From Schmidtea nova (taxonomy: Eukaryota), in contig CM097883.1 of NCBI GenBank assembly GCA_044892505.1, forward strand, positions 276,644,001 to 276,708,000: 64,000 nt of DNA. The letters are read 5' to 3'. This document shows, piece after piece, positions 1-57,932 of this stretch. Numbering within the stretch: position 1 is the stretch's first letter; each line of letters opens with the position of its first letter. Both the position numbers and the translations under genes were made by a program. Under the pieces are notes generated by a model. That model was not told the DNA's origin. It was given only the letters and a program-made list of their open reading frames with translations, and ran no database searches.

Positions 1-1894
1 CTTCCACTATATCTGGTCTATAGCTGACCACCAATGTTTCGCGTGTTTCGACTTCCTTATATACCAAAGACGAAATCACGTATGATTTTCCGTTGGCCTC
101 CAATACGCCATAGTAAGGGAAGTTTGAAACTGATGATTGGTGTACCGGTTTCCCGTCGTATTCTTTTATCCGAGGTACCCAATTTCTCTCTGGTCGCTGC
201 CAAAAACTAGGGTCTTCATTGTCCAAATCCTGGGGTATCTTTGCTGAATTTCCCGTTCCAACGAAATCCCCTTCTCTTATAATAATAGGTTCGCCCTTAA
301 CCTCCGGAATCTGTTCCATATCGGGTGGGATGAATGCTGTTTCGATTAAATCTTTGTCTTCCGTCGAGATGGGATTTGGTACTTTCTTTTTGATCTTTAG
401 ATCTTGTAACCTTACAACAGGTTCTTGACTTTTCTTTGGGGGTGACTTTTCTACTGAAGTCAATTTTTTAAAAGTCTTAGTAACTTTTTCCAAGAGCTTG
501 TTCTCTTTCTTTGGTGGATTTTCTGGCACGATCTTTGTAATTGTACGGCTGTCTCCGTGTAAAGTTAAACGCATCTCTGTTTGCTCCTCACCCTCGCTTT
601 CGCAGGTGGCGTAATCGTCTTCATCAGCTAAGGATATAGCTGGAGGGGATAGTGATTCTTCCTCAACTATCTTTTGCAATTTGGTTGATAATGGTTGTTC
701 CTGGGGTAAGCTCTCAATAGCTTTCCTTTTACTCGTTTCTTGTGGCTGTATTGTATGAACCATTTTGACTTCTGATGTAATCGTCCCACTACGATTACCT
801 GGGGTAATGTCATCTACCCAAACTTCTCTCAGTTTAAGGTAAATATTACGTGTCGTTTCCACGTCATTTTCCGTTTTCAGATCTGAACGGTTTAGTTCTT
901 CTTTTTCGAGAATTGACTTTGATAAATACGCGAGTCGATAATGTCCGTTACATTTCTTTAGTTCTCTCGCTTCCAGGCATTTTGCTGCTCCTAGTTCTCT
1001 AATGCCCAATACTCGTTGAGGGTGTAACTGGACTGCTTCCAAGAAATCGTTGACTTGGAGACCTATTAGAATTTTCCCATCACATAATTTTCTAATACGG
1101 TCTGCGCAATCCTCTCCATCAAATTGTCCGATGATTTCTTTTTCGGTCATACCATGCACGTGCGATTGGTAATGTTTGACCTGGTTTCTGGGTGTAACCA
1201 CCGTGTTTAGTATTAAATCACCACAGTAGTTTGCTATCGAAACAGCCACCAAAGCTGGCTTTAAATAATCTCGCAAAGTTGCGTAATGCGCTGCAACAAA
1301 TATTGACAATCTATCTTCTTGATTGGGGTGCAGATTCATCCGAACAAAGGATTTGAATGATTTGAGATCGTTCTCATTCACATTATAGGTCCAGGCAGGT
1401 TCATTTTTCCACAATGATTGCACTGCCTTGCTAGGTTCCAAAATCTCTAATACCACAATAGTATTATATCCGTCACATTGGATGGAGATATTCTTTTCTC
1501 TGCCATCTCCGTTACTAATTTCTAGAGTTGATTCTGGTTGAAGTAGGATGGGTCCTGTGGCTCCTGCCATGAAGATTGTAAAGGGTTTATTGATCGCGTG
1601 AATCAGGAGATGGTGAGTAAATGTTGATCTGTTAAATTCCGCCATGTGTTCAGTCAACCGGGTGTTCTCACGGCTGGTAATTGTGACTATGCACATTTGT
1701 CTCTTAGGCGATCCGAGAAACTTAAAATTGTTTGGGATGCCGGTGCAGTGCCCGTAATACCAATAGCGACGACCTTTCCGTGCTTCTGCGGATATCGCTT
1801 TTTCGATGTTTCGATAAATCAGTTTTTCCTTCTGTACTGTTTGCACATCGATAGTGCTATAACGCTGCTTGTATTGTGACACTTGATGCTTCAT
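1..1894 (-). CDS. Accessory ORF (>630 aa, open to window edge) with a REXO4/ISG20-like DEDDh exonuclease fold lacking the Exo I acidic residues
   Basis: Manual translation from ATG 1894 (MKHQVSQY...) shows no stop down to position 1; the frame is also open upstream to the TGA at 2083-2081. Residues at about 818-1306 read ALVAVSIANYCGDLILNTVVTPRNQVKHYQSHVHGMTEKEI...DGKILIGLQVNDF...LAYLSKSIL...ENDVETTRNIYLKLREVW, paralleling REX4-family motifs. Confidence 0.8.
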   Translation of the reverse strand, partial: MKHQVSQYKQRYSTIDVQTVQKEKLIYRNIEKAISAEARKGRRYWYYGHCTGIPNNFKFLGSPKRQMCIVTITSRENTRLTEHMAEFNRSTFTHHLLIHAINKPFTIFMAGATGPILLQPESTLEISNGDGREKNISIQCDGYNTIVVLEILEPSKAVQSLWKNEPAWTYNVNENDLKSFKSFVRMNLHPNQEDRLSIFVAAHYATLRDYLKPALVAVSIANYCGDLILNTVVTPRNQVKHYQSHVHGMTEKEIIGQFDGEDCADRIRKLCDGKILIGLQVNDFLEAVQLHPQRVLGIRELGAAKCLEARELKKCNGHYRLAYLSKSILEKEELNRSDLKTENDVETTRNIYLKLREVWVDDITPGNRSGTITSEVKMVHTIQPQETSKRKAIESLPQEQPLSTKLQKIVEEESLSPPAISLADEDDYATCESEGEEQTEMRLTLHGDSRTITKIVPENPPKKENKLLEKVTKTFKKLTSVEKSPPKKSQEPVVRLQDLKIKKKVPNPISTEDKDLIETAFIPPDMEQIPEVKGEPIIIREGDFVGTGNSAKIPQDLDNEDPSFWQRPERNWVPRIKEYDGKPVHQSSVSNFPYYGVLEANGKSYVISSLVYKEVETRETLVVSYRPDIVE

Positions 1895-2080
1895 ATCTGA
1901 AAGAAAAATAATTAACGTTAATATCAGATATACTGATAGGCCAATATTGGCTAAAAAGAAATGCATAAATCTCGATTTACGGGATCTACTTATGCTGTAA
2001 GTTAATGCTACTCGGAGCTCAACAAGATTATAGATTTTAATATATATATAAATACAAATATGCGATTTTATCTGTAATTG

Positions 2081-2242
2081 TCATAATCTCGTCATCATAA
2101 TCCCATCAACCGACTCAATGGCCTGACTGAAGAATAGTTTCATCCAAACTCCCATTGCTATCAATGTAGTGATCATAGCTAATACTGCTGACGTAATAAT
2201 CCATACCCAACGGGTAATTTTCCCAAGTGAGTAATGGGGTTT
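2081..2242 (-). other. Transmembrane-anchor peptide encoded in the -1 frame relative to the polyprotein end
   Basis: The -1 frame reads KPHYSLGKITRWVWIITSAVLAMITTLIAMGVWMKLFFSQAIESVDGIMMTRL*. It opens just before A-AAC-CCC (2242-2236). Confidence 0.6.
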
Positions 2243-5200
2243 ACTTCATTAACTTCACACTGACAACTTTTAATATAGCTTTCTGTTGATACTGTTGGTT
2301 TTACCATTTTCAATCCTTTCAATCTCTGCCATATTGCAGGATGAATGACGTAACTTTCTTTCCGTATCAATGATGTAACCGATTTCGTTGTCGTCGATGA
2401 TTGTGGTAATTTCAAAGAGATAACTTCATAAAATACCTCATTCCATTCATCGACTCCTGGCTTTTGTTTATTATTCATATAAGTGATATGAGCTTCCCAC
2501 TCCACTGAGCTGTTCCACTTGAGATTTTGTTTCTCAATATCTTCATTTAGCCACAATTCTTGTACTATTTCCTTGTCGGAATGGATTTCTATCTTTACTC
2601 TATCCACTCCTTGTTTTGGTTGGCTGAAGGTAATCATACCTTGTTGGATATTTATTCTAACTTTCCTTTTGAAATCTGCTGTCTTCAACTTCCATTGTGA
2701 CTTTGAAAAATCTGACCATCGTCCAAACATAAAATGTTGAACAAGTATATCTAACAGATATTCCTTTTCTGCTCGTAAGTCCTTTATGACTTTCACTCTT
2801 GTGTTTGAATCCAATGTAAAATGGAAACAACGTCGTTCGCAAAACGAGAACTTGAATTTTGTATCATTTTCAGCTAATGATATTATCCTAAATTCCTGGA
2901 AAGATCTTCTAAATGCGAGATCTTGAATTTGTACCGCTGTTGGAACAAATGTCTTTACACAGGATATAAGGCAACTTATTATTACCAAAAACGTAACTGA
3001 TTTTGGCACGCCTCTTGATCGTAATGGATATCTGTCTGAGACTGGTTCTGACCCTTTATCCTCCTTTTTCTTAATCGGATCTTTCTCCGTGACCGCAACT
3101 TTCTTGCATCTGTTAGCATGTACCATTATTGGTTCAGCTTTTCTATTTGCTACTAATTGCAAGATTAAATTCGTGTCTGTGGTTCTCAAAACCTCATATG
3201 GTCCTTTGAAGTTTCTCATTAATTTAGGTGATAAGCCCTTTTTATTATAATGGCTTTCCAACATCACCTTGTCTCCAACTAACATGCCATGTCCTTTGGC
3301 TTTCTTATCATGATAATCTTTCGACGCTTCCTGACTGAATTTTATACTAAGACCTGCTTTTGTCCATGCTTCTTGCATTCTTTCTCTCATTTCCATGAGA
3401 TAATCCTCTTGGTCTAAATACTGCGTTGCTTTTGGGAAAAACAACAAGTCTATAGGCATTTTACTTTGCCTTAAATACATGAGATAGAACGGCGTTTGTC
3501 CCGTACCCTCATGAACAGCATTTCTGTATGCGAATAAGCATGATGGAATATGTATATCCCAATCCGTTTGCCCTGAATTTACGTATGATGCTAGCATATT
3601 TGCGAGCGTTCCGTTAAATCTCTCTACCAATCCGTCTGTTTGTGGATGATACGGAGAGGTATTCAATTTTAAAATGTCGAAATAATCATTTATTCCTTTT
3701 AACAGATTACTCATGAAATCTGCTCCTCTATCTGTTAGTAGTTTTGTAGGTACTCCATACCTAAAAACAATTTGCTCTACGAAAATCCTGGCTATCGTAT
3801 CTGCCTTGTGATTCGGTATCGGATAAGCCTCCAGCCATTTTGTCAGGTAATCGCAAAATACCAATATGTATTTGTTACCACTATTTGATTCTTTGAATGG
3901 CCCTAAAACATCCATCGCCGTCATTTCCATCGGTGTGGATGGTACTGGCATTGGTTTCATTGGCACATGAGGTTTCTTCCCCGTATTTCTCCTGGTGATA
4001 CAGATCTTACATGTCTGACACCATTCCTGTACGTCTTGTTTTATTGTCGGCCAGAAATATTTCTGCTTCAACCTTGACAATGTTTTCCTGGAAGACAAAT
4101 GCCCTCCCAGTGCTCCATCATGATATTGTAACATCAAGGCTTCCCGATATTTCTTAGGGACCATTATGACATTATCCCTTACGTCTACATATTTGACTAA
4201 TCCTTCTTCTAGAATAAATTTGTCTCGATTTTTCTCCCAATATTTATTAAATTCCGTCGGTATGAACTTTGCTTCTAAAGCCTGTCTGATTTGGTTTATC
4301 TCTTCATCCGATTGTTGTGCTGCCATTAAATCCGCGAGTCTGTTTGCTTCTCTTGTAAGTGCGAAGATTGTTCCTTCTAATCTTCCTTCTTTGATATCTT
4401 CTGCTTCATCACCTTGGTCCATTCGCGAAAATGCATCTGCATTCCCATTTTGATGTCCTTTTCGGTAATGTATTTCGATGTCATATGGCTGCAAGATCAA
4501 TGCCCATCTAACCAACTTTGATGTATCCATAGTATGCTTTGTTAACCACTGTAATGGTCTATGATCCGTATACACAATGATCTTTCGACCCCATAAATAT
4601 GTCCTGAATTGGTGTATAGCATACACAATTGCTAATGCTTCTAATTCGATAACTGCATAATTCTTTTCATGTGGTTTTAATCCTCTGCTAGCATACGCTA
4701 TGGCATATTCGTCTCCTAGGTCATCTCTTTGACCTAACACAGCACCAATACCCCGAGTGCTGGCGTCCGTCATGACCAAAAATTGTTTCTCAAAATCTGG
4801 AAACCGTAATATAGGAGGTTCCACGAGCATCCTCTTTAGCATATCAAATGCTTCCTGTTGCTCTTTTCCCCATACAAATTTGACATTTTTGCCCTCTAAT
4901 TGTGTCAGAGGAAATGCTATTGCCGAAAAGTTCCTGATGAACTTTCTATAATATCCCACTAAGCCCATAAACCCTTTTATATGTTTGACTGTCTTTGGCT
5001 CTGGAAAATTCTTTGCTTTCTCAACATTTGCTGGATCTGGTTTTACTCCATCCTTCGAGATAATGTGACCGACATAGACTACCTCTGATTCGGCCCATTT
5101 ACATTTCGATGGTTTTACCTTAAGATTTGCATTAATTAACCTTTTGAATACGTCCTCTAAATGTTCTAAATGTTTTTCCAAATCTGGAGAAAATACTATG

Positions 5201-8200
5201 ATGTCATCTATGTATACCATTGCATGATGAACATCCATTAACATTAGATTCATGGCTCTTTGAAACGTTGCCGGCGCTCCTGTGAGACCAAATGGCATTA
5301 CTGTATATTCGAAGTGTCCAAGGCTTGTAGAAAAAGCCGTAATTGGTATTGTCTCCTCTTTTAACTTGATTTGGTAAAATCCCTTCTGAGCATCCATCAC
5401 TGAGAAATATTTTGAATTTCTCATGCGTCCGTAAATGTAATCCAGTAATGGTAATGGGTGACTATCCTTGCAAGTTGCTTCGTTTACCATTCGATAGTCG
5501 TTGCATAGTCGTACCGTTCCATCCTTTTTGGCCACCACTATCATTGGTGACTGGTATGGTGATTTACTATGCCTGATGATGTTATGTTTTAACATCAGTT
5601 TTACCTGCTTATCGACAGGTTCTTCCAAGCTAAACGGAATTCGATACGGTCTCAGTTTTATTGGTTTCATGTTGTTAAGAACAATTTCATGTTCCAACAA
5701 GTTCGTCTTTCCCAGATCATATTCGTGCTTGGCGAATACTTGATCATATTTTCTTAATAACATGTTGACTTGGATATTCTCTCTTCGTGAAAGAGCTTTG
5801 CTATTTGCCGTTGGCGCATCATAGTACTCGATGTCTGATTCTCTATTTTCTGCCTTTATTGTCAGGACAGATCCTCCATTTGGTAATTGATCCGACTTTG
5901 ATACTCTCCCTACTCTTGTATCTGGGTACAATTTTAATGGTTTTATATCTAAATTGGCTACCCGAATTGGTATTCTGCCATTTTCAACTTTACCAATGCT
6001 ATGCGTAATTGGTAGATTATATTTTGCTGAGAACCTTTCATCTGGTTCGAATACAACTTCTCCTTCCCACTGTTCGCTAGTGGACACGAAACATACTGTT
6101 TCTGCTCTGGGTGGTATTATCATCGTATGGTCGATGAAAACTGTATCATCATTATAAACTTTTCTTTTCTTACCGATTGATCTAACTAACAATCCGGTAG
6201 CACAGTCAAATACAACTCCTTTTAATCTTCTTAAAAGATCCATTCCTAGTAGACATTCTACTGGACAAGTTCTCATGACTATAATATCATGACGAAATTC
6301 TTGGTCACATAGCTTGATGTTACAAGCTAGAGTACCAATAATATTCAATGATGTGCCTGTAGCACCTGTTAGCGAAACTCTTGAGGTTTCCATTGATTCC
6401 AATTCTTTTTGATTTAATAGTGTTGCCTCTATGATGGTGCCGTCTGCTCCTGAATCTATCACTGCATTAACTGTGTGTCTGTTTATTTTTATCTTTATCA
6501 TGGGTTTCTTATCCAAGTTCACCCCATTTGCCATCAAAATAGTAGCATGCGTTATCCCGATGGTATTTGCTCTGAATTTCTCTGCTTCATCTTGTTCGGT
6601 ATCACTCAATTTTGGATTATATTCCTTAAATTTAGCTTTTATTGCTTCTAACGACTCGATAGGATACAGTTTCCCTTCATTTTCTAACGATAATGATATG
6701 CTTTTACCAGTCTCTCGAGCATCTTTGTCGAGAATTTGTTGATGTTTAGAAATGTACATTTTGTTTCTTGGAGTGGTTAAAGCATAATTTTGTTTGCCCT
6801 CTCCTGATGTCTTTTGAAACTCTGGCGATTCCCCCTTTGGCGCTGTTGGCAAGCTTCTAAGATATGGTAATTGCATATATCTTGGGCTTCTTTTCAATCT
6901 AGGTGATGCTGTATTGATTGTAAATTTCTGGTCTGCACTATCGTATTCATCTTCTGAAATCATACTTTTGTCGAAAATCTGTTTTGTCGCTTCGTAAGGT
7001 GGTTGATAATCCCGATATTTCATTTTCCTTAACTGATGATTCGGTTTTTTATTGTAGTTTCTTTTTCGACTTCTACTTTGCCTCTGAACTGTATTAAGAG
7101 AGTCTCCATTACCTCCTCCTTCCGAATTGTTATCGTCCCGATAACTTGTATTACCCTCCATTTCGATTCCAATAATCTCGTGTTTTACCAAGCTTCTCTG
7201 TTTGATTGTCTTTATTTCTTTACGATGATGTTTAAACAATGCAAATTCCGCACACATAGGACACAATCCTAGTATCAACTTCCAAGACCATCCACCGATT
7301 TTGAATATACTGTATGTGGAGATTAATTGTGTTATTATTAACTTTAGAATTACGAATATTGCATATATTCCTGAGCAGCCTGCCACGAAAATACCAAAAT
7401 TGGTAAACCTTCCCCATATTTTCATCATCACATTTTTAGCTGCTTCTTTATAATGATCTGGACCGAATAATAAATTGTAATCTGGTCTCATTTCGTTTGC
7501 TTGGTAAATTGTTCTTATGATTTCAGTGATACCTCTTTCTCTTACTTGAGGGAATAGCAATGTCTGTCTTGCCTCCTCAATGTCTGCTGAAGTGTAAATT
7601 CCTCCTTGTGATAATTCATCGAGTGATTTAAATTCCATGTTTTCCTCGAGTTTCGTGACTTCCAATGTTTCCACCTTTCTATTAGATGGTTTTCTGTCAG
7701 GTAATGAGATCCATCTATCATTTACCTTGTATAACGGTGATATTGCTGGATTGCAAATTGAAGGTTGAGGCTTTTGTTTTTCATCCAAAAGTCTCCTCGT
7801 AACTGGCATTACAAATCGTATTTTGTTTTGATATGACACTGGTAATTCTAGAGTACATTCATTATACCGAGTTAATTGTACCTCTATGGGTTGACATTGA
7901 TAGCTGTATATAGCTTCCCCCATAATTCTGCCAAACATTCCATCTTCTAGCAACATAGGTGTCACTAGATCCGGATTCACAATTGATATCGCTAATCGAT
8001 TTCGAACTATTTCGCGATTTAGTTTGCAATCATTGAGTATTACTTCCTGATACATTTCCTGCATTTGTCCTTGCAGATCATGATATAAATAATCTATTTT
8101 ATTATTTATATAGTTCGTGATTTTGATATCCTGGCTGTGAATATTCTTGGCTTTTTGGATGAATGTTTTTGACAAATATAATCCTTTATAGTTGGTCTCA

Positions 8201-11200
8201 TACACCACTTTTCCGCATTTTGTCTTCTTATCTTTTCTGACAAATCTGATTGCATCTTTCTTATCTTCTGATACTAATACTAGAGGTGTGATTTCCTCAC
8301 TAATATCCTCTTTTTGCTGTTTGTTGATCCTTTTCAACGTCTTTTCTTTATCCCAAATTCTTTCTCTTTTGGGTAAATCTCGATACTTTGTCCCGTTCAA
8401 CTTATGGAAATTAATTTTCTTTAGTAATGACAATTCGCAATGGTCTAGTATTTGATCGTATAATAATGTAATGACCCCTGTTCTGCAGCTTCCAAATTTC
8501 GCAAGGCACTGAGGGTGTGCCATTAATCTTCCTGATAATACATCGAACGTTCCTTCGTATTCTCTTAATTCGATTGAATAGTCCTCGATATCTACGACAA
8601 AACTTACCAACTCCGATCCGCGAGTTTTCTTTCTTCCCGTACAGGTACCATCTGATCCGATTGATCCTCCTCGTGTAATGGTTACTCCCAGTGTTTTTCC
8701 TACTTCCGCGGCGATGGTTACCTCGTTATCGATTCTTAAAGTACCTTTTCGAAAGGCGTCTAGACAATCCTCTGGCAATATGTTGACAGGTCTAGGTATT
8801 AGAGTGGCTGATAGAAAAGCTGTATAGCTGTGTGAACCACAATAATATTCAAACGTTGCTCTTTGGACTCTACATTCTCTTATCTTAGTTCTGAAGAATT
8901 CACTTTCTTGGTAGACATAGTATTCGACCTTTTCTCCTGTTTGGACCTTTTCTGGATGTGCCTCTTTGCACTCAATTGCATCTACGAGCGAATATATCCG
9001 AGCTAACTTTGGATCACTGCAATCAAACGCTGTCATTGTGTTTGTCTGTTTCATTATCCCCATCATTACTAAAAACATTAATATCATATTCGTCATATTC
9101 CCCATTCCTCCATTTTCGAGGTGGTTGTTATTCATAGCCTCTTCCACAAATTCATATCGTGGTTTATGTTTCTCCTCTTCCCAGAAATTATTTTCACTCA
9201 TCCACGTTCCGAGATAATGCTCCGTTATCTCCGTGATCTGGTCTATTTCTCGATTAATAAGCTTCTTCTCATTGCCTGCGCGGGCTAAAGCATCTTGAAT
9301 CAACATAGATAATGCTGTCACTATTTTTCCTTTAGATAACCCATCTTGTATGAGTGTCTCTAACATACTCTGTATCTCGTTTTGCGGTACCCCTCTAGGT
9401 AATCTCCTCATCGTCTTCGCGATTGACTGTGTTACTTTATCCACTTGAATTCCTTTAATCCGAGTAATCTGCCATTCTGGCTTTAATATTCCTATGATCT
9501 GTTTTAATCTCTTCCATGTCAGAGATTTTTCTGGTATATGTACACCTTCGTCTCTCATATCAACATCCCTGGCTATTCCTGACAGAGTTTTCATCTGAAC
9601 CTGTTTAATGGTTTCTTGGTTTAATTGCTCCGTTGGTGGAGGTTTCATTTGATCTTTCCTAGGCCTTCCTCGCCTATCTTTCTTTGTCTGCCATGCTGGC
9701 CTGATAGTTTCTACCGCCTGAGAAGTTGAAGCTCCCACGTTAGTTTCCTCATTATTGAGTCTGATTTCCTCTTCTCCGTGATTATCGGCATCGATATCTA
9801 CATTAAATGGTTGTGTTTCAACATTACCAGTGACCATTTCATCTGGTAACCGTAATGCTGACCATTGAGATTCAGGTGGCTCTACGGGAATGATTGCTAC
9901 CGTTGTAGTTTCAAAAGGTAGACATCCCACATCTACTAAATATTCATCATCATCCACTTGTCCTCCATGAATCATAATCAAGAATATACCGGTAGTCTGC
10001 CCAGTATCTATTAAATCCTTTCTCAACGTTATCACTTTGCTAAAACAACGATATAACCTCGTCATGGGTTCTTTTCCCGATATTCGAATGTCTAAAGTTA
10101 TCATGCCTTGTCGATGTGCTTGATGACGTATTGCTGTTCCATTTTTTCTTATTAACATTTTTATTTCTGTTTGAAAAGAACTAGTTTCTTTTACTACAGG
10201 TAGTAATATAGGAATTATATTCTCCAATGATTCTACTGGTATGCGCAATACCAACATCCAGTCTAATATTTCCTTGATTGTTTCTCCATCCCTCGGAGAT
10301 TTCTGCAGCTCTATCTTCAGACGTTGCTCTATTTGTTGGACCTCCTCCAACTGTGCAATTTCCATTTGTGTGAGTAGAAACACACTGTCTTGATCCACTA
10401 CTGGGACCGATATTCCTGTCAGTTTCGTTGTGAGTTTCGTTACCCTTCCTGGTAATACACCATTTTGTAGTAGTGTTTCCCCAACTACTAACTTTTCTCC
10501 ATATAAATAAAAATCATATCTATTATGTTTCAATTTCATCATTGTATCTGACAACTTATCTGTTCGACATCTTACATTCATGTCGATGTTAAACTCCTGC
10601 TCCTGAGGAAGTTTTATGTTTAAATGCGAATCCTGAAGATCCCATTCATGCTCCATTGCAGTTCCTATCTTTCGTAGGATTTTATGTATGTCGCTATTAT
10701 ACCTTGGATCATCTTCGACCTGAGATATTAATTGTAATATCTTTCCAATTTCACTATTCTTGATATCACCTTGTGATAATTTCTCTAATTCTCTAGTCAG
10801 TCTCTGCTGATACTCATATCTGGAATCCACCAGTTTTAAACATTTTGCTAGGGTATCTGACCCTTTCTTGGCCTTTGTTTCCTTGAACAAAGCCTGGTCG
10901 AACTCGCTCAGTATGGTACTCATACTGGGTTCGTCATCATTATCAGAATTTGTCTCTGATTCTATTACCTCATGATTCTCGCTGCTGGAATCCATGGGTT
11001 CACTATTTCCTTGCTCATCTGTGTAAGCATCATGATTTTTCTCAGCTGAAATCATCAAAACTGTTCCTTGCCCAACTGTGTGAGCATCATCGCTTTCCTC
11101 AATGGGATTCATTATAACTGTTCCTCGCCCATCCATGTGAGCATGATTTTTCTCAGCTGAAATCATAAAAACTGTCTCTTGCCCAACTGTGTGAGTCTCA

Positions 11201-12468
11201 TTTATTTCTTCAATTTTATTCATCAAAACTGTTCCTCGCTCATCTGTGTGAGCATGATTTTTCTCAGCTGAAATCATAAAAACTGTCTCTTGCCCAACTG
11301 TGTGAGTCTCATTTATTTCTTCAATTTTATTCATCAAAACTGTTCCTCGCTCATCTGTGTGAGCATGATTTTTCTCAGCTGAAATCATAAAAACTGTATC
11401 ATCTCGATCCATTAGCCGTGCTAATCGATTTTTCTCCTCCTGGATTTCCATTTCCAGTTGTTGCAAATACGTCAATTCTTTATCGTGATTGACCATGAAC
11501 GTAGTTTTCGGCTTGCTGACATTACCACTATTGGTAATCCTACTATTCGTATTATTACTCTGATTTTGAGGACACGACCTCAGAATATGCCCGAATTTTC
11601 CACATCCGTGACATTTTATCTTCCCTGATGAATTCACATCATCCCTTTTAATATTAAAATTCCCATTCGTTGGGAGATTCCTAACTCTACAAACGGAAGC
11701 AACATGCCCTCTGCGTTTGCATTTATCACACTGCAAGTTCGTGACTCTACAGTTCTCAACACTATGATTATTCATACCACATTTAGTACACTGAATACCC
11801 CTACGAGTATCAGCTACCTTCTTACTGTGGCAATCTTTTGATATGTGCCCTTTCTTATGGCAGTTAAAACATTCAATTGCTGGCTTCTCATTATTTACCA
11901 TAAATGATGTAGCTTTTTCTAAGCTGCTTTCGATTACGACAGCTTTTCTTGTTAATTCCCAAAAATCATCTCCCGTGTGGAGAATCAATGCATTTCTCAT
12001 TACATTTGTGAATCCAGCTAATAATTGGTCTTTAACCATAGCTTTAGTTGCATCATTCCAGGTAGTTCTGAGCCCAAATGCTCTTTCTGCTAATAACAAT
12101 AATTGATAGGAAAATTCTCCTACATGTTCATTTGCATTCTGCTTCCTGTGATAAAATTGTTGTCGGAAAATTCTACTTGAATCTCCCGGTAATATTCTAG
12201 CCGTTAGTGATTCTCTCATCTTTTCCCATGTACCTGGTTTATCTGCTGCTGGTAACGCCATAATATCATTGTAATTTTCCCTTGCCATACCCTTAAGGTA
12301 AATTGGCAGTCTTTGTATCATTATTGCATCTGGATACCCATAGGCCTTTGCCATCTGATAATACTCTGACATAAACTCCGGAAATTCCCCTGGATCTCCG
12401 CTAAATGCCTTGACAGGTAAAGCGGGATATCTAGCAAAAACATTATTCTCTTCAGCCATGTCCTCCAC
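2179..12468 (-). CDS. 3429-aa Gag-glycoprotein-Pol-ectodomain polyprotein
   Basis: Uninterrupted ORF in the track, with recognisable Gag, viral glycoprotein, PR, RT, RNaseH and IN motifs in that order. Confidence 0.95.
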   Translation of the reverse strand: MEDMAEENNVFARYPALPVKAFSGDPGEFPEFMSEYYQMAKAYGYPDAIMIQRLPIYLKGMARENYNDIMALPAADKPGTWEKMRESLTARILPGDSSRIFRQQFYHRKQNANEHVGEFSYQLLLLAERAFGLRTTWNDATKAMVKDQLLAGFTNVMRNALILHTGDDFWELTRKAVVIESSLEKATSFMVNNEKPAIECFNCHKKGHISKDCHSKKVADTRRGIQCTKCGMNNHSVENCRVTNLQCDKCKRRGHVASVCRVRNLPTNGNFNIKRDDVNSSGKIKCHGCGKFGHILRSCPQNQSNNTNSRITNSGNVSKPKTTFMVNHDKELTYLQQLEMEIQEEKNRLARLMDRDDTVFMISAEKNHAHTDERGTVLMNKIEEINETHTVGQETVFMISAEKNHAHTDERGTVLMNKIEEINETHTVGQETVFMISAEKNHAHMDGRGTVIMNPIEESDDAHTVGQGTVLMISAEKNHDAYTDEQGNSEPMDSSSENHEVIESETNSDNDDEPSMSTILSEFDQALFKETKAKKGSDTLAKCLKLVDSRYEYQQRLTRELEKLSQGDIKNSEIGKILQLISQVEDDPRYNSDIHKILRKIGTAMEHEWDLQDSHLNIKLPQEQEFNIDMNVRCRTDKLSDTMMKLKHNRYDFYLYGEKLVVGETLLQNGVLPGRVTKLTTKLTGISVPVVDQDSVFLLTQMEIAQLEEVQQIEQRLKIELQKSPRDGETIKEILDWMLVLRIPVESLENIIPILLPVVKETSSFQTEIKMLIRKNGTAIRHQAHRQGMITLDIRISGKEPMTRLYRCFSKVITLRKDLIDTGQTTGIFLIMIHGGQVDDDEYLVDVGCLPFETTTVAIIPVEPPESQWSALRLPDEMVTGNVETQPFNVDIDADNHGEEEIRLNNEETNVGASTSQAVETIRPAWQTKKDRRGRPRKDQMKPPPTEQLNQETIKQVQMKTLSGIARDVDMRDEGVHIPEKSLTWKRLKQIIGILKPEWQITRIKGIQVDKVTQSIAKTMRRLPRGVPQNEIQSMLETLIQDGLSKGKIVTALSMLIQDALARAGNEKKLINREIDQITEITEHYLGTWMSENNFWEEEKHKPRYEFVEEAMNNNHLENGGMGNMTNMILMFLVMMGIMKQTNTMTAFDCSDPKLARIYSLVDAIECKEAHPEKVQTGEKVEYYVYQESEFFRTKIRECRVQRATFEYYCGSHSYTAFLSATLIPRPVNILPEDCLDAFRKGTLRIDNEVTIAAEVGKTLGVTITRGGSIGSDGTCTGRKKTRGSELVSFVVDIEDYSIELREYEGTFDVLSGRLMAHPQCLAKFGSCRTGVITLLYDQILDHCELSLLKKINFHKLNGTKYRDLPKRERIWDKEKTLKRINKQQKEDISEEITPLVLVSEDKKDAIRFVRKDKKTKCGKVVYETNYKGLYLSKTFIQKAKNIHSQDIKITNYINNKIDYLYHDLQGQMQEMYQEVILNDCKLNREIVRNRLAISIVNPDLVTPMLLEDGMFGRIMGEAIYSYQCQPIEVQLTRYNECTLELPVSYQNKIRFVMPVTRRLLDEKQKPQPSICNPAISPLYKVNDRWISLPDRKPSNRKVETLEVTKLEENMEFKSLDELSQGGIYTSADIEEARQTLLFPQVRERGITEIIRTIYQANEMRPDYNLLFGPDHYKEAAKNVMMKIWGRFTNFGIFVAGCSGIYAIFVILKLIITQLISTYSIFKIGGWSWKLILGLCPMCAEFALFKHHRKEIKTIKQRSLVKHEIIGIEMEGNTSYRDDNNSEGGGNGDSLNTVQRQSRSRKRNYNKKPNHQLRKMKYRDYQPPYEATKQIFDKSMISEDEYDSADQKFTINTASPRLKRSPRYMQLPYLRSLPTAPKGESPEFQKTSGEGKQNYALTTPRNKMYISKHQQILDKDARETGKSISLSLENEGKLYPIESLEAIKAKFKEYNPKLSDTEQDEAEKFRANTIGITHATILMANGVNLDKKPMIKIKINRHTVNAVIDSGADGTIIEATLLNQKELESMETSRVSLTGATGTSLNIIGTLACNIKLCDQEFRHDIIVMRTCPVECLLGMDLLRRLKGVVFDCATGLLVRSIGKKRKVYNDDTVFIDHTMIIPPRAETVCFVSTSEQWEGEVVFEPDERFSAKYNLPITHSIGKVENGRIPIRVANLDIKPLKLYPDTRVGRVSKSDQLPNGGSVLTIKAENRESDIEYYDAPTANSKALSRRENIQVNMLLRKYDQVFAKHEYDLGKTNLLEHEIVLNNMKPIKLRPYRIPFSLEEPVDKQVKLMLKHNIIRHSKSPYQSPMIVVAKKDGTVRLCNDYRMVNEATCKDSHPLPLLDYIYGRMRNSKYFSVMDAQKGFYQIKLKEETIPITAFSTSLGHFEYTVMPFGLTGAPATFQRAMNLMLMDVHHAMVYIDDIIVFSPDLEKHLEHLEDVFKRLINANLKVKPSKCKWAESEVVYVGHIISKDGVKPDPANVEKAKNFPEPKTVKHIKGFMGLVGYYRKFIRNFSAIAFPLTQLEGKNVKFVWGKEQQEAFDMLKRMLVEPPILRFPDFEKQFLVMTDASTRGIGAVLGQRDDLGDEYAIAYASRGLKPHEKNYAVIELEALAIVYAIHQFRTYLWGRKIIVYTDHRPLQWLTKHTMDTSKLVRWALILQPYDIEIHYRKGHQNGNADAFSRMDQGDEAEDIKEGRLEGTIFALTREANRLADLMAAQQSDEEINQIRQALEAKFIPTEFNKYWEKNRDKFILEEGLVKYVDVRDNVIMVPKKYREALMLQYHDGALGGHLSSRKTLSRLKQKYFWPTIKQDVQEWCQTCKICITRRNTGKKPHVPMKPMPVPSTPMEMTAMDVLGPFKESNSGNKYILVFCDYLTKWLEAYPIPNHKADTIARIFVEQIVFRYGVPTKLLTDRGADFMSNLLKGINDYFDILKLNTSPYHPQTDGLVERFNGTLANMLASYVNSGQTDWDIHIPSCLFAYRNAVHEGTGQTPFYLMYLRQSKMPIDLLFFPKATQYLDQEDYLMEMRERMQEAWTKAGLSIKFSQEASKDYHDKKAKGHGMLVGDKVMLESHYNKKGLSPKLMRNFKGPYEVLRTTDTNLILQLVANRKAEPIMVHANRCKKVAVTEKDPIKKKEDKGSEPVSDRYPLRSRGVPKSVTFLVIISCLISCVKTFVPTAVQIQDLAFRRSFQEFRIISLAENDTKFKFSFCERRCFHFTLDSNTRVKVIKDLRAEKEYLLDILVQHFMFGRWSDFSKSQWKLKTADFKRKVRINIQQGMITFSQPKQGVDRVKIEIHSDKEIVQELWLNEDIEKQNLKWNSSVEWEAHITYMNNKQKPGVDEWNEVFYEVISLKLPQSSTTTKSVTSLIRKESYVIHPAIWQRLKGLKMVKPTVSTESYIKSCQCEVNEVNPITHLGKLPVGYGLLRQQY
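2236..3000 (-). other. Post-integrase extension: hydrophobic signal-like segment, one or two FN3-like domains, Ser/Thr stalk
   Basis: RYPLRSR then VTFLVIISCLISC; IKDLRAEKEYLLDILVQ...GRWSDFS (FN3 L-x4-Y-x3-V pattern and WSxWS-like motif); sequons NDT and NSS; stalk PQSSTTTKSVTS. Confidence 0.55.
3140..4330 (-). other. Integrase domain
   Basis: HDGALGGH...CQTCKIC; MDVLGP; TDRGADF; LVERFN; GPYEV; no chromodomain seen. Confidence 0.93.
4425..5760 (-). other. Reverse transcriptase and RNase H domains
   Basis: RLCNDYRMVN, MPFGLTGAPATFQR, VYIDDIIVFS, TDASTRGIGAVL, ELEALAIV, TDHRPL, NADAFSR; catalytic residues intact. Confidence 0.95.
6200..6510 (-). other. Retropepsin (aspartic protease) domain
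   Basis: VNAVIDSGADGTII ... CLLGMDLL. Confidence 0.9.
7200..9105 (-). other. Chuvirus (Jingchuvirales)-like fusion glycoprotein embedded in the polyprotein
   Basis: Signal-like MILMFLVMMGIM, then AFDC, CRVQ...YYCG, GSIGSDGTCTG, CLAKFGSC, YETNYKGL, YINNKIDY, GRIMGEAIYSYQCQP, CTLELPV...FVMPVTRRLL, GGIYT, and WGRFTNFGIFVAG leading to a TM segment. The motif order matches the chuviral G family as I recognise it. Confidence 0.85.
9653..9684 (-). other. AT-hook motif
   Basis: KKDRRGRPRKD fits the R-G-R-P core with basic flanks. Confidence 0.6.
9886..10623 (-). other. Two putative ubiquitin-like (beta-grasp) modules separated by a helical segment
   Basis: FYLYGEKLVVGETLLQNGV (10432-10623) and LIMIHGGQVDDDEYLVDVG (9886-10104) resemble the ubiquitin/SUMO LIFAGKQLEDGRTLSDYNI segment; neither ends in GG. 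Confidence 0.4.
11010..11397 (-). repeat. Coding tandem repeat, 111 bp / 37 aa, about 3.5 copies
   Basis: TVFMISAEKNHAHTDERGTVLMNKIEEINETHTVGQE occurs twice identically, then a diverged third copy and a partial fourth. Confidence 0.97.
11570..12468 (-). other. gag: Gag: capsid-like domain plus four CCHC zinc knuckles
   Basis: FSGDPGEFPEFM...LPIYLKGMA; CFNCHKKGHISKDC, CTKCGMNNHSVENC, CDKCKRRGHVASVC, CHGCGKFGHILRSC. Confidence 0.9.
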
Positions 12469-12528: not shown

Positions 12529-12546
12529 ATCACGTCGGGCTCACCA
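12529..12546 (-). promoter_or_regulatory. Primer-binding site complementary to the 3' end of tRNA-Trp
   Basis: TGGTGAGCCCGACGTGAT differs at one base from the tRNA-Trp PBS TGGTGACCCCGACGTGAT, and lies 3 nt after ...CCGAACA. Confidence 0.85.
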
Positions 12547-12549
12547 AAA

Positions 12550-13358
12550 TGTTCGGTTCGTATCAGTGGTTTACGACGAACACAGAAATATAAATATATA
12601 TTTGATACTTTAGTTTGATTATCGGACTCCAAACGATAATCCGCTTATTAATTATAAATAAATTATATGTTTTAGGTTGTGTGTAAAGAAAAACAAGATC
12701 TAATTCCTTTTAATAATATGTATTGTGAAATATGTAAATCAATGTACAATATAATAAAATAGCTGCTAAGCAAAAGTTAGAGAATCGGTTATACAAACCG
12801 TCCTAAGATGTTTAAGAACGAAAGCTGGACCTAAAAGGCTCAACAGCTCCGACTAAATGAAAGGACACAAGATGAGGGGTTTCCCTGTAGTTTAACCGCG
12901 ATAGTGACAACCCAGAATTGGTTGTCACTGTGACTTAATAATTTTCCCTTCTAATAATTTATTATTTAACGATTTTGCTGAAGGGGAAAAATAGTAATAC
13001 AACTATTTCCCCGTGATCGATTTATAAGATTTAAAACAAAACTAGGAAAATTACCAGCTACTAAAGATTATTCCAATTTAGGGAAATTATCACGAACGAA
13101 ATTCAAGCTAAGCTTCTTGTAATACTTCTGCCGTAAAATTAATTTCTCCAATTCACAAATTTGTCAAACTAAAATTCTAAAATTCACTTCGGTAAAATTT
13201 ATGTTCTGTAAACACTTATGTTTCTCTCTCTACTTCTGTCAAAATTACTTTCTGTTTCAACTGATTTTGCAATCAGTTTATATACAAATTATTTTCTCTC
13301 ATGTAGGTCTAGACGACCACCTATTACTAACTACGTGTAGGTCGAAATTGACCTTACA
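12550..13358 (-). repeat. Putative 5' LTR (~809 bp)
   Basis: Ends in ...AACA just before the PBS; candidate start TGTAAGG at 13358, beyond which the sequence becomes low-complexity AT. The outer boundary is unconfirmed because the partner LTR is off-window. Confidence 0.6.
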
Positions 13359-13580: not shown

Positions 13581-15605
13581 TTAATTACAAAAACCCCGAG
13601 ATCCCTTGATCTCGAACCCTAACAGTCCTTCATCCTGTGACATTTCTTCATGAAATCTCTTTCTTTGCCGAACTCTTTGTTGCTTATAGTCAGTATTAAT
13701 ATCACATTTTTTAGCCAGCTCAGTTGCTTCATTCTCAATCTGTTCGAACTCAGATTCAAATTCACTACGCATGTTTTTCATATCGTTTTGAAATAGTTGA
13801 ATCAAATGAGAAGCTGTTGCCAAATCAATACTACTTCTCTGCAAATATGTGGACAGACTGAAAGCCTTATCTAGCACTTTTTTCCATAATATTAAAAGAA
13901 CTAAGAATTTGTATGCATAAAGTGTTACAAGAATACCCTTTGCCTCAGCCACCTGTTTAGAAGTACAGTTTTTTAACTCACCATCCACAATTCGTTGCAG
14001 GGCAACTAATAGTGCTGGTAAATTCTGCAAGACTGCATCTACAGCTGATTTCCTGGATGCCCATCTGGTTTCGCAAAGTCTTTTTAGAGTTAATGTAAAC
14101 GATTTTATATGATTGCATTGTTCTTTTAATATTGAAAGACGAGGTAAACTGCCAGAAAAAAATGTATAAAAACTTTCAAGGGTTCCAAAAAATAACTGAG
14201 TTTGAACATTGGAGGTTACTGTGTCAATTAGAATTAAATTTAAATTTGGTGCACAACAGTGGGTAAAGAGCGCATTTGGAGCAATCTGCCTAACTCTTGC
14301 TTGGAGACCTGATATTTCCCCCGACATTGTGCTAGCTCCATCATATGACTGACCATAACTCATAGTTATTGACAAATCCAAGTTTTCAATTGCTGAAACA
14401 AAAACGTTGAAAAAATCTGGGGCACTTGCTCCCGGTAATTCACTGAATTTTTTAAACCTCTTTACTGCATCGCCATTTTCTGTTACATATCTTAAAGATA
14501 AAGAAAACTGGTCAATGCTACTTATATCAATAGTTGAGTCAACAATCACTGCAAAATACTTAGCTACTTTGATTTCATCCACAATATTTGATAGAATCTG
14601 AGATGATATGGATTGTATCAGATCATTTTGTATATCGGGTCTGAGATATGTTGCATTTCGATCAATCATTAATAAATGTTGTTCCAATATTGCATCATTT
14701 TTAGCCAACAGTTTAATCAGTTCAAAGAAATTCCCTTCGTTTGTCACTGGTGAACCTAAGCCTTGATACTCACGATGGCCACGGAATGCCAATCCTTGTT
14801 TTCCCAAAAAAAGTACTGCATCAATGATACGTTTTAAAATCATCCTATTTTTTCTATTTCTTTCTTTTCTGTTGTCAGAAGACCAGACAACACAATTCTA
14901 TCGTTAAACAACCGGAATTTTGTAAGAAATAGTTCTTTCTCTGCTTTTTTGTGACTTTCGCTACTTTCATGTTTTTCAATTTTGTGCGTGCCTTAAGCAA
15001 AATTCTTGCAGCCAATATTTGGATCACTTCAAGTATCGGATCGACTAGCAAAAAGCCAACAAGCAAAACAAATCATTATATTAGCTTTTGGTGAGTAGAC
15101 CAGCCAATGTCTATCAATTTCTCGACCACCTTTTACTTGTTTCTTCTTATACCAATTAGCACTGAAATGACGTCCAGTTTCATCTTTTGGGAAATTTTCA
15201 AATTTATCTTTAAGACCCAGCTGACACGGACTTAACTCAAGTAGTGCACGAACTAGTTCTGGCGGCACAGGTTTGTCACAAAACAGATGTGGATCTGTTG
15301 GGTATTCCATGTTTGGGTCAATAACTGCACGAAGTCTTATTCTAACTGTGTCATCTTCGTCCTCCACAATAGGGTCTGTTGACGTGATTAGGCCTACTGT
15401 TGAATCAGAACCCACTTCCTGAATAGTCACGGCAGCCGGAGTTGTGGTGTTGTTATCAACTCCTAGATTTGTTGTGAATTCTTTTTCTGACACGGAAGAC
15501 GTCGCAGACATTGTTGGATTGCTGAATGAAAAATATGCATCCAATTTTGTATATTTTGAAGATTCTCTTTCACGATCTTCGACTTCTTTTTTCCTCTTTT
15601 TATCC
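13581..15605 (-). pseudogene. hAT (ZMYM1-like/DUF4371) transposase, frameshifted and truncated at both ends
   Basis: TTF-type zinc finger WLVYSPKANIMICFACWLF; KHESSESH in a shifted frame; LGKQGLAFRGH, DSTIDISSIDQ, YDGASTMSG, HCCAP (HCxAH altered), CETRW; no C-terminal dimerisation domain. Confidence 0.88.
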
Positions 15606-23539: not shown

Positions 23540-51008
<27,469 letters not shown>

Positions 51009-57744: not shown

Positions 57745-57932
57745 NNNNNNNNNNNNNNNNNNNNNNNNNNNNNNNNNNNNNNNNNNNNNNNNNNNNNNNN
57801 NNNNNNNNNNNNNNNNNNNNNNNNNNNNNNNNNNNNNNNNNNNNNNNNNNNNNNNNNNNNNNNNNNNNNNNNNNNNNNNNNNNNNNNNNNNNNNNNNNNN
57901 NNNNNNNNNNNNNNNNNNNNNNNNNNNNNNNN
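57745..57932. other. Assembly gap (N run)
   Basis: Run of N. Confidence 0.99.

What the first reader, a model, noticed from the sequence alone, without database searches (positions are those of the whole stretch)
7200..9105. A complete chuvirus-like fusion glycoprotein sits between Gag and protease inside one Gypsy polyprotein
Seen: in the stop-free 3429-aa ORF, about 630 aa between the Gag-side region and the IDSG protease carry a signal-like segment, the ordered Cys/Gly motifs of chuviral G proteins and a C-terminal TM. Known: env genes captured by invertebrate LTR elements (errantivirus baculovirus-F type, nematode phlebovirus-like and gB-like env, chuviral G in mosquito BEL/Pao elements) lie 3' of integrase. 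Inference: an intact Ty3/Gypsy with Gag-G-Pol order in one frame is an architecture I do not recognise. It may be a distinct lineage of enveloped, possibly infectious retroelements. All RT, RNaseH and IN catalytic motifs are intact.
Basis: partly seen in the sequence, partly recalled or inferred. Interest (0 to 1): 0.95.

Follow-up and report, generated by a model that had tools for sequence, protein, structure and literature searches.

The report
Known Gag-envelope-Pol Gypsy retroelement, planarian type
The stretch really encodes a complete chuvirus-like membrane-fusion glycoprotein in frame between Gag and protease of an intact Gypsy-type retroelement, but this odd gene order was already described in planarian "Burro" and "errantivirus" elements, so it is a further member of a known lineage.

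Summary
Observation confirmed. Window 2179-12468 (minus strand) is one stop-free 3,429-codon ORF. Residues 1122-1760 (nt 7189-9105) match Pfam PF24664 (Monjiviricetes fusion glycoprotein) at E 3e-89. They align from signal peptide to membrane anchor with the G of a true chuvirus, Tacheng tick virus 4 (E 5e-48), and keep 11 cysteines invariant across 80 homologues. The AlphaFold model (pLDDT 85) matches chu-like virus G (Foldseek E 1e-42) and herpesvirus gB (E 1e-13), which is the class III fusogen fold.

The order Gag-spacer-G-linker-PR-RT-RNaseH-IN is not an artefact. At least 17 other long ORFs from independent contigs carry G upstream of Pol. Their Pol sequences form one clade, and G and Pol identities co-vary.

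In-frame env between gag and pol was published for planarian Burro elements (Arkhipova & Yushenova 2019). GAG-ENV-POL Gypsy elements are catalogued in nematodes, bryozoans and flatworms (Sacco 2022; Chary & Hayashi 2023/2026). The closest published envelope is Schmidtea "Smed_errantivirus_4".

What my analysis adds:
- a conserved 18-nt primer-binding site;
- evidence that the G signal peptide is truly internal in many relatives;
- a conserved downstream ORF with an ISG20-like exonuclease fold.

Interest is low to moderate.

The parts
12550..13358 (-). Putative 5' LTR. The 3' end is firm; the 5' start is approximate.
   Evidence: It ends in ...ACA three bases before the primer-binding site, and the same ...ACA-PBS junction is seen in relative L001. 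The start is guessed from a TG and a change from AT-rich simple sequence. The 3' LTR lies outside the window, so no pair could be found.
12529..12546 (-). Primer-binding site, 18 nt, beginning TGG and complementary to a tRNA-like ...CCA 3' end
   Evidence: It is unique in the window, with 0 matches expected by chance. An identical 19-nt block lies at the same relative place in L001, whose flanks are otherwise diverged.
2179..12468 (-). ORF1: 3,429-codon polyprotein with no stop; first ATG at 12459
11434..12468 (-). Gag: capsid-like part plus four CCHC zinc knuckles (residues 1-345)
   Evidence: Pfam zf-CCHC, and a weak Retrotrans_gag match. It is 44% identical to the same part of P0001.
9106..11433 (-). 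Spacer region of unknown function (residues 346-1121). It includes three 37-residue tandem repeats at nt 11031-11400.
   Evidence: No Pfam or PDB match. It is colinear with P0001 at 23% identity. Repeats.
7189..9105 (-). Chuvirus-like class III fusion glycoprotein G (residues 1122-1760)
9034..9105 (-). Internal signal-like hydrophobic segment (residues 1122-1145), ending just before the conserved FDC
   Evidence: D28 and C29 of G are nearly invariant.
7303..7398 (-). Membrane anchor of G (residues 1691-1722)
   Evidence: Hydropathy. It aligns with the anchor of the chuvirus G.
6514..7188 (-). Low-complexity, K/E/S-rich linker between the G tail and PR (residues 1761-1985)
6217..6513 (-). Aspartic protease (DSG)
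   Evidence: Pfam RVP E 7e-12; motif read
5059..5532 (-). Reverse transcriptase (YIDD)
   Evidence: Pfam RVT_1 E 5e-33, covering profile positions 2-205 of 205
4483..4872 (-). RNase H
   Evidence: Pfam RT_RNaseH E 4e-37, full-length match
3097..4161 (-). Integrase: HHCC finger, D,D35E core and SH3-like C-terminal domain
   Evidence: Pfam Integrase_H2C2 and rve. The C-terminal 163 residues are 60% identical to P0001.
2182..3096 (-). Variable tail of ORF1 with a membrane-anchor-like segment (residues 3153-3181, nt 2926-3012)
   Evidence: Hydropathy. No sequence similarity to P0001 here.
2..1966 (-). ORF2: at least 655 codons, cut by the window edge. It has an N-terminal hydrophobic anchor and an ISG20-like exonuclease fold.

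Best explanation
What it is (shown). Nt 7189-9105 encode a complete type I, class III viral fusion glycoprotein of the chuvirus / Monjiviricetes G family. It is embedded in frame in ORF1 of an integrated Ty3/Gypsy-type LTR retroelement.

Element layout on the minus strand: LTR, PBS, then ORF1 [Gag with four zinc knuckles, spacer, signal-G-anchor, linker, PR, RT, RNase H, IN, tail], then ORF2 (ISG20-like). The rest runs off the window start.

The element belongs to one Pol-defined clade of Gypsy elements that all carry this G upstream of Pol. That is the lineage already described in planarians (Burro; 'Smed errantiviruses').

How it most likely works (inferred):
1. ORF1 is translated as one chain.
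2. The hydrophobic segment at residues 1122-1145 acts as an internal signal sequence, as in the glycoprotein precursors of flavi-, pesti- and bunyaviruses.
3. The G ectodomain is threaded into the ER, and signal peptidase cuts just before the conserved FDC.
4. The anchor at residues 1691-1722 stops transfer, so linker-PR-RT-RNaseH-IN stays cytosolic, tethered to the G tail until the element's own protease frees it.
5. Gag and Pol assemble under a G-studded membrane and give enveloped particles able to fuse with another cell.

The intact 10.3-kb frame says this copy is young or under selection.
For: G identity:
- Pfam PF24664 at E 3.2e-89.
- 1,460 homologues in the representative library.
- End-to-end alignment with Tacheng tick virus 4 G, a member of Chuviridae.
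- 11 invariant Cys.
- AF2 model with pLDDT 85.2. Its best viral matches are chu-related G, E 2.4e-42 to 1e-30, TM 0.54-0.65. All top 50 PDB matches are herpesvirus gB, E down to 7.5e-14.
- The family profile hits only gB among PDB sequences.

Gypsy identity: PR, RT, RNase H and IN Pfam matches in that order, with motifs intact, and a conserved PBS.

Lineage:
- G followed by PR-RT-RH-IN in one ORF in P0001, P0003, P0007, P0016, P0017, P0152 and others.
- Every Pol at 40% identity or more to the window's carries G. The 18 carriers (window included) sit in one NJ clade of 20 tips, and the two others are ORFs cut before PR or RT.
- G is always N-terminal of Pol, and Pol and G identities correlate (r 0.84).
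- The whole of ORF1 and ORF2 is colinear with L001.
- Relatives L004 and L005 have terminal direct repeats about 15.3-16 kb apart.

Internal signal: in 6 of 11 relatives examined, no Met lies within 25 residues upstream of the hydrophobic segment at the N edge of G. Translation cannot start there.

Prior descriptions: PMC6431247; PMC13524379 and its preprint supplements.
Against: - No LTR pair is in the window, because the 3' end is cut off. Full element structure and age are therefore unknown.
- No transcript or protein data exist, so polyprotein processing, signal-peptidase cleavage and topology are inferred from sequence alone.
- In this copy a Met opens the signal, so a separate env message is not excluded.
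- A one-to-one Gag:G:Pol output is unusual for retroelements. In three relatives Gag is a separate ORF from G-Pol, which may point to regulated expression or to sequencing error.
- G has a second short hydrophobic stretch after the anchor. It is also present in the chuvirus G, and its topology is unsettled.
- Only one N-glycosylation sequon lies in the ectodomain.
- The host is inferred, not shown.
Confidence: 0.8

Rival explanations
1. G is made from its own spliced subgenomic message, as retroviral env is, starting at the Met of residue 1122. The uninterrupted frame through Gag-G-Pol would then be a by-product of compact coding, not a sign that G is cut out of a polyprotein.
For: This copy, and P0001, P0012 and P0017, have a Met directly before the hydrophobic signal. 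Retroviruses and insect errantiviruses use spliced env messages (established knowledge).
Against: Six of 11 relatives have no Met within 25 residues of the signal. G is fused to Pol in every carrier. Removing G by splicing would be needed to make Gag-Pol, yet the frame is kept open across both junctions in diverged relatives. No splice prediction or transcript data were available.
Confidence: 0.25
2. The G domain is a relic that no longer serves transmission, or has been taken over for a host or intracellular role. The element would then spread only as an ordinary intracellular retrotransposon.
For: Function cannot be read from sequence. Only one sequon lies in the ectodomain. Many envelope-bearing elements multiply mainly within the germline (discussion in PMC13524379).
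Against: All 11 family-invariant Cys, the signal, the anchor and a confident class III fold are kept. G is retained in all 17 related carriers, down to 40% Pol identity, and co-varies with Pol. That is not expected of a dead passenger.
Confidence: 0.1
3. The G block is a mis-assembly, a one-off insertion into a Gypsy copy, or contaminating exogenous virus sequence.
For: Nothing positive. Metagenome contigs that hold relatives are partly chimeric with bacterial DNA, which shows such assemblies can mislead.
Against: The same in-frame order occurs in at least 17 other long ORFs from ENA, JGI and NCBI records. Both junctions are in frame and colinear with L001. GC content is even across the element. 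The element is flanked by AT-rich host-like DNA and other transposons. The arrangement has been published independently.
Confidence: 0.02

Closest known systems
Burro / GYPSM1 giant Gypsy elements of planarians (Grohme 2018; Jurka 2007; Arkhipova & Yushenova 2019, PMC6431247)
   Same: Gag with CCHC knuckles, env in frame between gag and pol in one huge ORF1, env hits to mononegavirus-type fusion glycoproteins, accessory ORFs, and an AT-rich host. P0152 (4,844 aa, with ankyrin repeats and several PR copies) looks like such a giant, and its G is 39% identical to the window's.
   Different: The window's ORF1 is 3,429 aa, against 4,873-5,140 aa. Pfam finds no MATH, BIR, BCL2, ankyrin, SUMO-like or dUTPase domain in it. 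Relatives with both repeats measure about 16 kb, not over 30 kb. Burro sequences themselves could not be fetched for comparison.
'Smed_errantivirus_1-6' of Schmidtea mediterranea and other GAG-ENV-POL Gypsy elements of flatworms, bryozoans and nematodes (Chary & Hayashi, PMC13524379 / bioRxiv 10.1101/2023.10.26.564294)
   Same: Gene order GAG-ENV-POL, Gypsy Pol, class III ('HSV/gB-type') envelope, elements of about 14.5-14.9 kb, many copies per genome. The printed envelope rows share long motifs with the window's G. Smed_errantivirus_4 is the closest, about two-thirds identical by eye.
   Different: It is not identical to any printed row, so it is another family or another species. The paper does not discuss a single fused frame or an internal signal. 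Identity was judged by eye and not computed, because the rows have no reference usable in the tools.
Non-canonical nematode endogenous retroviruses (Sacco et al. 2022, J Gen Virol 103:1739)
   Same: By its title and by how PMC13524379 cites it: a metavirus that captured an RNA-virus glycoprotein gene, with env and pol order flipped.
   Different: A different host phylum. The paper is not held, so nothing further could be checked.
Mosquito BEL/Pao elements with chuviral G (Dezordi et al. 2020, PMC7642597) and arthropod Gypsy elements with the same G (PMC13524379, Methods)
   Same: The same glycoprotein family, captured by an LTR retroelement.
   Different: There G is a separate ORF next to or after pol, and the backbone is BEL/Pao in mosquitoes. 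Here it is Gypsy, with G in frame upstream of PR.
G of exogenous Jingchuvirales, e.g. Tacheng tick virus 4 (Chuviridae, Morsusvirus)
   Same: Colinear from signal peptide through FDC, all domains, the anchor and the juxtamembrane stretch. 23% identity, E 5e-48. Best structural matches.
   Different: In the virus it is a free-standing gene of an RNA genome. Here it is a domain of a retroelement polyprotein.

Membership tests
Monjiviricetes / chuvirus-type class III fusion glycoprotein (Pfam PF24664) | Profile match above the curated cut-off | tested here: met
   300 bits against a cut-off of 27, E 3.2e-89
Monjiviricetes / chuvirus-type class III fusion glycoprotein (Pfam PF24664) | Type I layout: signal sequence, ectodomain, single C-terminal anchor; colinear with a viral G | tested here: met
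Monjiviricetes / chuvirus-type class III fusion glycoprotein (Pfam PF24664) | Family-wide conserved cysteine pattern | tested here: met
   11 Cys invariant in 80 sequences
Monjiviricetes / chuvirus-type class III fusion glycoprotein (Pfam PF24664) | Class III fold (gB / G type) | tested here: met
   Predicted model only: pLDDT 85. Foldseek to chu-like G at E 2.4e-42 and to gB at E 7.5e-14.
Monjiviricetes / chuvirus-type class III fusion glycoprotein (Pfam PF24664) | Trimer formation and membrane-fusion activity | not testable with these tools
   Sequence and a monomer model only
Ty3/Gypsy (Metaviridae) LTR retroelement | Pol order PR-RT-RNaseH-IN with intact catalytic motifs | tested here: met
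Ty3/Gypsy (Metaviridae) LTR retroelement | Gag with zinc knuckles | tested here: met
   Four CCHC knuckles. The capsid part has only a weak Pfam match.
Ty3/Gypsy (Metaviridae) LTR retroelement | Primer-binding site next to the 5' LTR end | tested here: met
   The 18-nt TGG... site is conserved with L001. The primer tRNA was not identified.
Ty3/Gypsy (Metaviridae) LTR retroelement | Pair of long terminal repeats with target-site duplication | tested here: inconclusive
   No pair in the window, because the 3' end is off the window. Relatives L004 and L005 have terminal direct repeats.
Planarian-type Gag-G-Pol Gypsy lineage (Burro-like / flatworm 'errantiviruses') | Envelope gene in frame between gag and pol | tested here: met
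Planarian-type Gag-G-Pol Gypsy lineage (Burro-like / flatworm 'errantiviruses') | Pol groups with other G-carrying elements | tested here: met
   NJ tree of 110 Pol segments; identities
Planarian-type Gag-G-Pol Gypsy lineage (Burro-like / flatworm 'errantiviruses') | Envelope similar to published Schmidtea elements | tested here: met
   Compared by eye with the rows printed in the preprint's Table S2; not computed
Planarian-type Gag-G-Pol Gypsy lineage (Burro-like / flatworm 'errantiviruses') | Host is a planarian | not testable with these tools
   Only indirect support: host DNA at 22-31% GC and the nearest published relatives. Exact look-ups found no source record.
Burro in the strict sense | Giant size with MATH, BIR, BCL2, ankyrin and dUTPase domains in ORF1 | tested here: not met
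   None of these domains in Pfam scans. ORF1 is 3,429 aa.
Insect errantiviruses (gypsy, ZAM and the like) | F-type envelope as a separate ORF 3' of pol | tested here: not met
   The envelope is class III and lies upstream of PR.
BEL/Pao elements with chuviral G | BEL/Pao-type Pol | tested here: not met
   The Pol domains and nearest relatives are Gypsy-type.

The most novel reading that the evidence does not exclude
In this lineage the polymerase is obligatorily made as a membrane-tethered fusion behind the envelope protein, reached through an internal signal peptide. This would be a retroelement whose expression copies the polyprotein logic of enveloped RNA viruses. The element also carries a captured ISG20-type exonuclease gene: catalytic residues are kept in some members and lost in this one. 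Neither point is discussed in the papers I could read.
Probability: 0.35. Interest if true: 0.6.

Novelty: new member of a known kind. Interest (0 to 1): 0.3.

Why it matters
The arrangement matters because it shows a retrotransposon turning into an enveloped, retrovirus-like agent by taking a fusion protein from a negative-strand RNA virus and placing it inside its own polyprotein. That point was already made for planarian Burro elements in 2019 and was broadened to nematodes, bryozoans and flatworms in 2022-2026.

What this copy offers is a compact member (about 13 kb or more) with ORF1 fully open, on which public transcript and protein data could settle descriptive questions:
- Is the envelope really cut out of a polyprotein by signal peptidase?
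- Is Pol tethered to the membrane?
- What is the conserved exonuclease-like ORF2 for?

Tried and rejected
Searches that found nothing:
- Exact-sequence look-ups of ORF1 and of two neighbouring transposon ORFs found no source record, so the host could not be named.
- The word-index protein search with G alone returned nothing. The exhaustive representative search had already found the family.
- A single-sequence PDB search with G gave only noise. The family profile and the fold search were needed.
- No LTR pair in the window at two seed settings.
- No tRNA gene in the window to name the primer. The PBS complement is not among the PBS strings of the preprint's tables.
- No Pfam or PDB match for the spacer or the ORF1 tail.
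- No 2A-like NPGP motif, and only one RxKR site, which lies in the linker.
- No second G copy in the window.
- Sacco et al. 2022 is not held.

Rejected idea: that relatives sit inside bacterial genomes. L003 and L004 carry bacterial genes, but GC jumps from 0.35 to 0.65-0.77 at the joins, so these contigs are chimeric.

Corrected slips: two calls failed on a wrong reading frame and were corrected.

Left out: a computed identity to the published Smed envelope rows, because those letters have no reference and long strings may not be typed.

The likeness was then tested properly.

Full report
THE OBSERVATION. The window holds one very long open frame on the minus strand, 2179..12468, of 3,429 codons without a stop. 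With the strand's base composition a stop is expected every 13 codons or so, and the chance of none is about 1e-117. The frame is therefore kept open by recent origin or by selection. A Pfam scan of the whole protein gives, in order:
- CCHC zinc knuckles (residues about 200-305; four are visible in the translation);
- PF24664 'Monjiviricetes_fusion' (E 3.2e-89, 300 bits, cut-off 27);
- retroviral aspartic protease (1986-2084);
- reverse transcriptase (2313-2470);
- RNase H (2533-2662);
- integrase zinc finger (2770-2828) and integrase core (2845-2942).

The finding's coordinates 7200-9105 are residues 1122-1757. Residue 1122 is a Met that opens a hydrophobic segment. A strong membrane anchor lies at 1691-1722 and is followed by a basic cluster. 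The catalytic motifs DSG, YIDD, the RNase H acidic residues, HHCC and D,D35E can be read directly in the translation. The one correction is that a 225-residue low-complexity linker separates the G tail from the protease.

IS IT A CHUVIRUS-LIKE, CLASS III FUSION PROTEIN? Yes, on four independent lines.
1. Sequence. An exhaustive profile-free search finds 1,460 homologues, 133 of them at E 1e-30 or better. One is the glycoprotein of Tacheng tick virus 4, a member of Chuviridae, Jingchuvirales. The pairwise alignment runs from residue 9 to 614 of the 639-residue G against 10-601 of the 658-residue viral protein (E 5e-48). It includes the motif just after the signal peptide, the anchor and the juxtamembrane stretch. 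The word 'complete' is therefore justified.
2. Conservation. In an alignment with 79 homologues of 19-36% identity, eleven cysteines and two glycines are invariant.
3. Profile against solved structures. The only hits are herpesvirus gB, at the central helix (E 0.035-0.2; weak but exclusive).
4. Structure. The AlphaFold2 model has mean pLDDT 85.2. Its best matches among predicted viral structures are G proteins of chu-related and chuviruses (E 2.4e-42 to 1e-30, TM 0.54-0.65). Its 50 best matches among solved structures are all herpesvirus gB (E from 7.5e-14). gB is the type example of the class III fusogen.

IS THE GAG-G-POL ORDER REAL AND RECURRENT? Yes. A search restricted to long proteins finds P0001 (3,181 aa) and P0002 (2,296 aa) with knuckles, G and PR in the same order. 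Among the best G homologues, the closest 17 are parts of long ORFs. Pfam shows G followed by PR-RT-RNaseH-IN in one ORF in P0003, P0007, P0016 and P0017, and G followed by one or more PR domains in P0004, P0005 and P0012. P0152, of 4,844 aa, adds ankyrin repeats and several PR copies.

Searching with the RT-IN part gives the converse. Every protein whose Pol is 48-57% identical to the window's carries PF24664, while the Pol hits at 29-43% identity among those listed in that search do not. The two most distant carriers, P0016 and P0017 (Pol 40-43%), came from the G search.

In a neighbour-joining tree of 110 Pol segments, the 18 G-carriers (window included) fall in one clade of 20 tips. The two other tips are ORFs that begin just before PR or RT, so their upstream part is simply not in the called protein. 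G always lies N-terminal of Pol. Identity to the window in Pol and in G co-varies (Pearson 0.84).

The whole element is colinear with contig L001:
- Gag 44%;
- spacer 23%;
- G 47%;
- Pol 57%;
- integrase C-terminal domain 60%;
- ORF2 28%.

This excludes mis-assembly and a one-off insertion.

THE REST OF THE ELEMENT. The element's GC (0.35-0.42) stands out from host-like DNA at 0.22-0.31. It continues to the first base of the window, so the 3' part is missing. That is why no LTR pair is found.

Seventy bases upstream of the first ATG lies an 18-nt site that begins with TGG (12529-12546) and is unique in the window. The same 19 nt, preceded by the same ...ACA, lie just upstream of the ORF in L001, although the flanks have diverged. 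This is a conserved primer-binding site at the end of a 5' LTR. The LTR start near 13358 is only a guess from composition.

Two relatives on longer contigs have terminal direct repeats 15.3 and 16.0 kb apart, which gives the likely size of such elements.

Downstream of ORF1 and in another frame, a second ORF (first ATG at 1966) runs off the window. It is conserved in L001 and L002 and matches the human exonucleases ISG20L2 and ISG20 (E 5e-5 for the whole ORF, 7e-6 for the domain). In relative L004 the match is clear (Pfam RNase_T 1.2e-7; ISG20L2 8e-12), and the acidic and histidine residues of the DEDDh site align. In the window's copy those positions are substituted.

HOW IT PROBABLY WORKS. 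Shown: the domain order, the hydrophobic segments, the conserved residue pattern and the fold. Inferred: everything about expression.

The most economical reading is a polyprotein with an internal signal sequence. The Gag-spacer part is made in the cytosol. The segment 1122-1145 then engages the ER, G is translocated, and signal peptidase cuts before the conserved FDC (small residues at -1 and -3, as in the chuvirus protein). The anchor halts transfer, and the linker and Pol remain cytosolic, tethered to G until the element's protease cuts.

The main support is that in six of eleven relatives no Met lies within 25 residues of the signal, so translation cannot start there. There is also no 2A-like motif.

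The rival is a spliced env message. It remains open for this copy, which does have a Met at that point. In three relatives from one long-read metagenome, Gag is a separate ORF from spacer-G-Pol. Whether that reflects regulated expression or read errors cannot be told.

COMPARISON WITH WHAT IS KNOWN.
- Arkhipova & Yushenova (2019, PMC6431247) re-annotated the giant planarian Gypsy elements Burro/GYPSM1. [quoted passage not shown] - Chary & Hayashi (eLife 2026, PMC13524379; preprint 2023) list GAG-ENV-POL Gypsy elements with class III envelopes in Nematoda, Bryozoa and Platyhelminthes, following Sacco et al. 2022 for nematodes.
- Their tables include six elements of Schmidtea mediterranea of 14.5-14.9 kb with up to 215 copies.
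- The envelope rows printed there share long motifs with the window's G. Smed_errantivirus_4 is the closest, roughly two-thirds identical by eye (not computed).

Together with the AT-rich host DNA, this makes a planarian source likely but unproven. The window's element is not Burro in the strict sense. It is shorter, and Pfam finds none of Burro's accessory domains.

NOVELTY AND VERDICT. The kind is known, and this is a further, compact and intact member. Three small additions come from my own analysis and are absent from the papers I could read:
- the conserved primer-binding site;
- the sequence evidence that the signal peptide is internal in many members;
- the ISG20-like ORF2, with an apparently intact active site in some members and a degenerate one here.

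Interest is 0.3.

RULES AND SLIPS.
- The N runs (30412-31132 and 57745-57932) were left as they are.
- Nothing in the window looked human.
- In my reasoning I once wrote from memory an approximate stretch of a human ISG20-type exonuclease.

Noticed in passing
window 2-1966 (-); also L001 9935-11689, L002 13863-15188, L004 19559-21610, L005 13230-14726: A conserved second ORF downstream of the polyprotein, with an N-terminal hydrophobic anchor and an ISG20/RNase_T-type (DEDDh) exonuclease fold. In L004 and L005 the catalytic residues align. In the window's copy, L001 and L002 they are substituted. I found no description of such an accessory gene in the papers read.
   Followed up: partly
window 11031-11400 (-), residues about 357-480 of ORF1: Three tandem copies of a 111-nt (37-residue) unit, 88-89% identical, just after the zinc knuckles.
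   Followed up: no
window 2926-3012 (-), residues 3153-3181 of ORF1: A membrane-anchor-like segment in the tail about 210 residues after the integrase core. P0001 and the Pol ORF of L002 have a hydrophobic segment at a similar distance (about 240 residues), although the tails do not align. Its function is unknown.
   Followed up: partly
P0002/L002, P0003, P0004, P0005, P0012, P0152: Relatives carry two to five tandem aspartic-protease domains between G and RT, whereas the window's element has one.
   Followed up: no
L003 about 17000 onward; L004 1-6000; P0007 (NCBI HBK71150.1): Metagenome contigs that hold relatives are joined to bacterial genes with abrupt GC jumps (0.35 to 0.65-0.77), so they are assembly chimeras. 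One relative is filed in NCBI as a Flavobacteriaceae MAG protein, which is very likely a mis-binned eukaryotic contig.
   Followed up: partly
window 32118-37018 (-): A separate, ordinary 4.9-kb Gypsy element with 238-nt LTRs that are 100% identical, so it is a very young insertion. Its Gag, RT-RNaseH and IN are separate ORFs, and its Pol is 32% identical to that of the G-carrying element.
   Followed up: partly
window 13581-14843 (-): A 420-codon ORF with a DUF4371 domain (hAT-transposase-like) lies directly upstream of the putative 5' LTR. It is probably a different transposon.
   Followed up: no
window 55650-56732 (+) and 63026-64000 (+): A pogo-like DDE_1 transposase ORF, and another Gypsy RT that runs off the window end (37% identical to the element's RT). 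The region is a transposon-rich stretch.
   Followed up: no
window 38663-39941: A satellite-like array of units of about 111 nt in very AT-rich DNA (GC 0.15).
   Followed up: no
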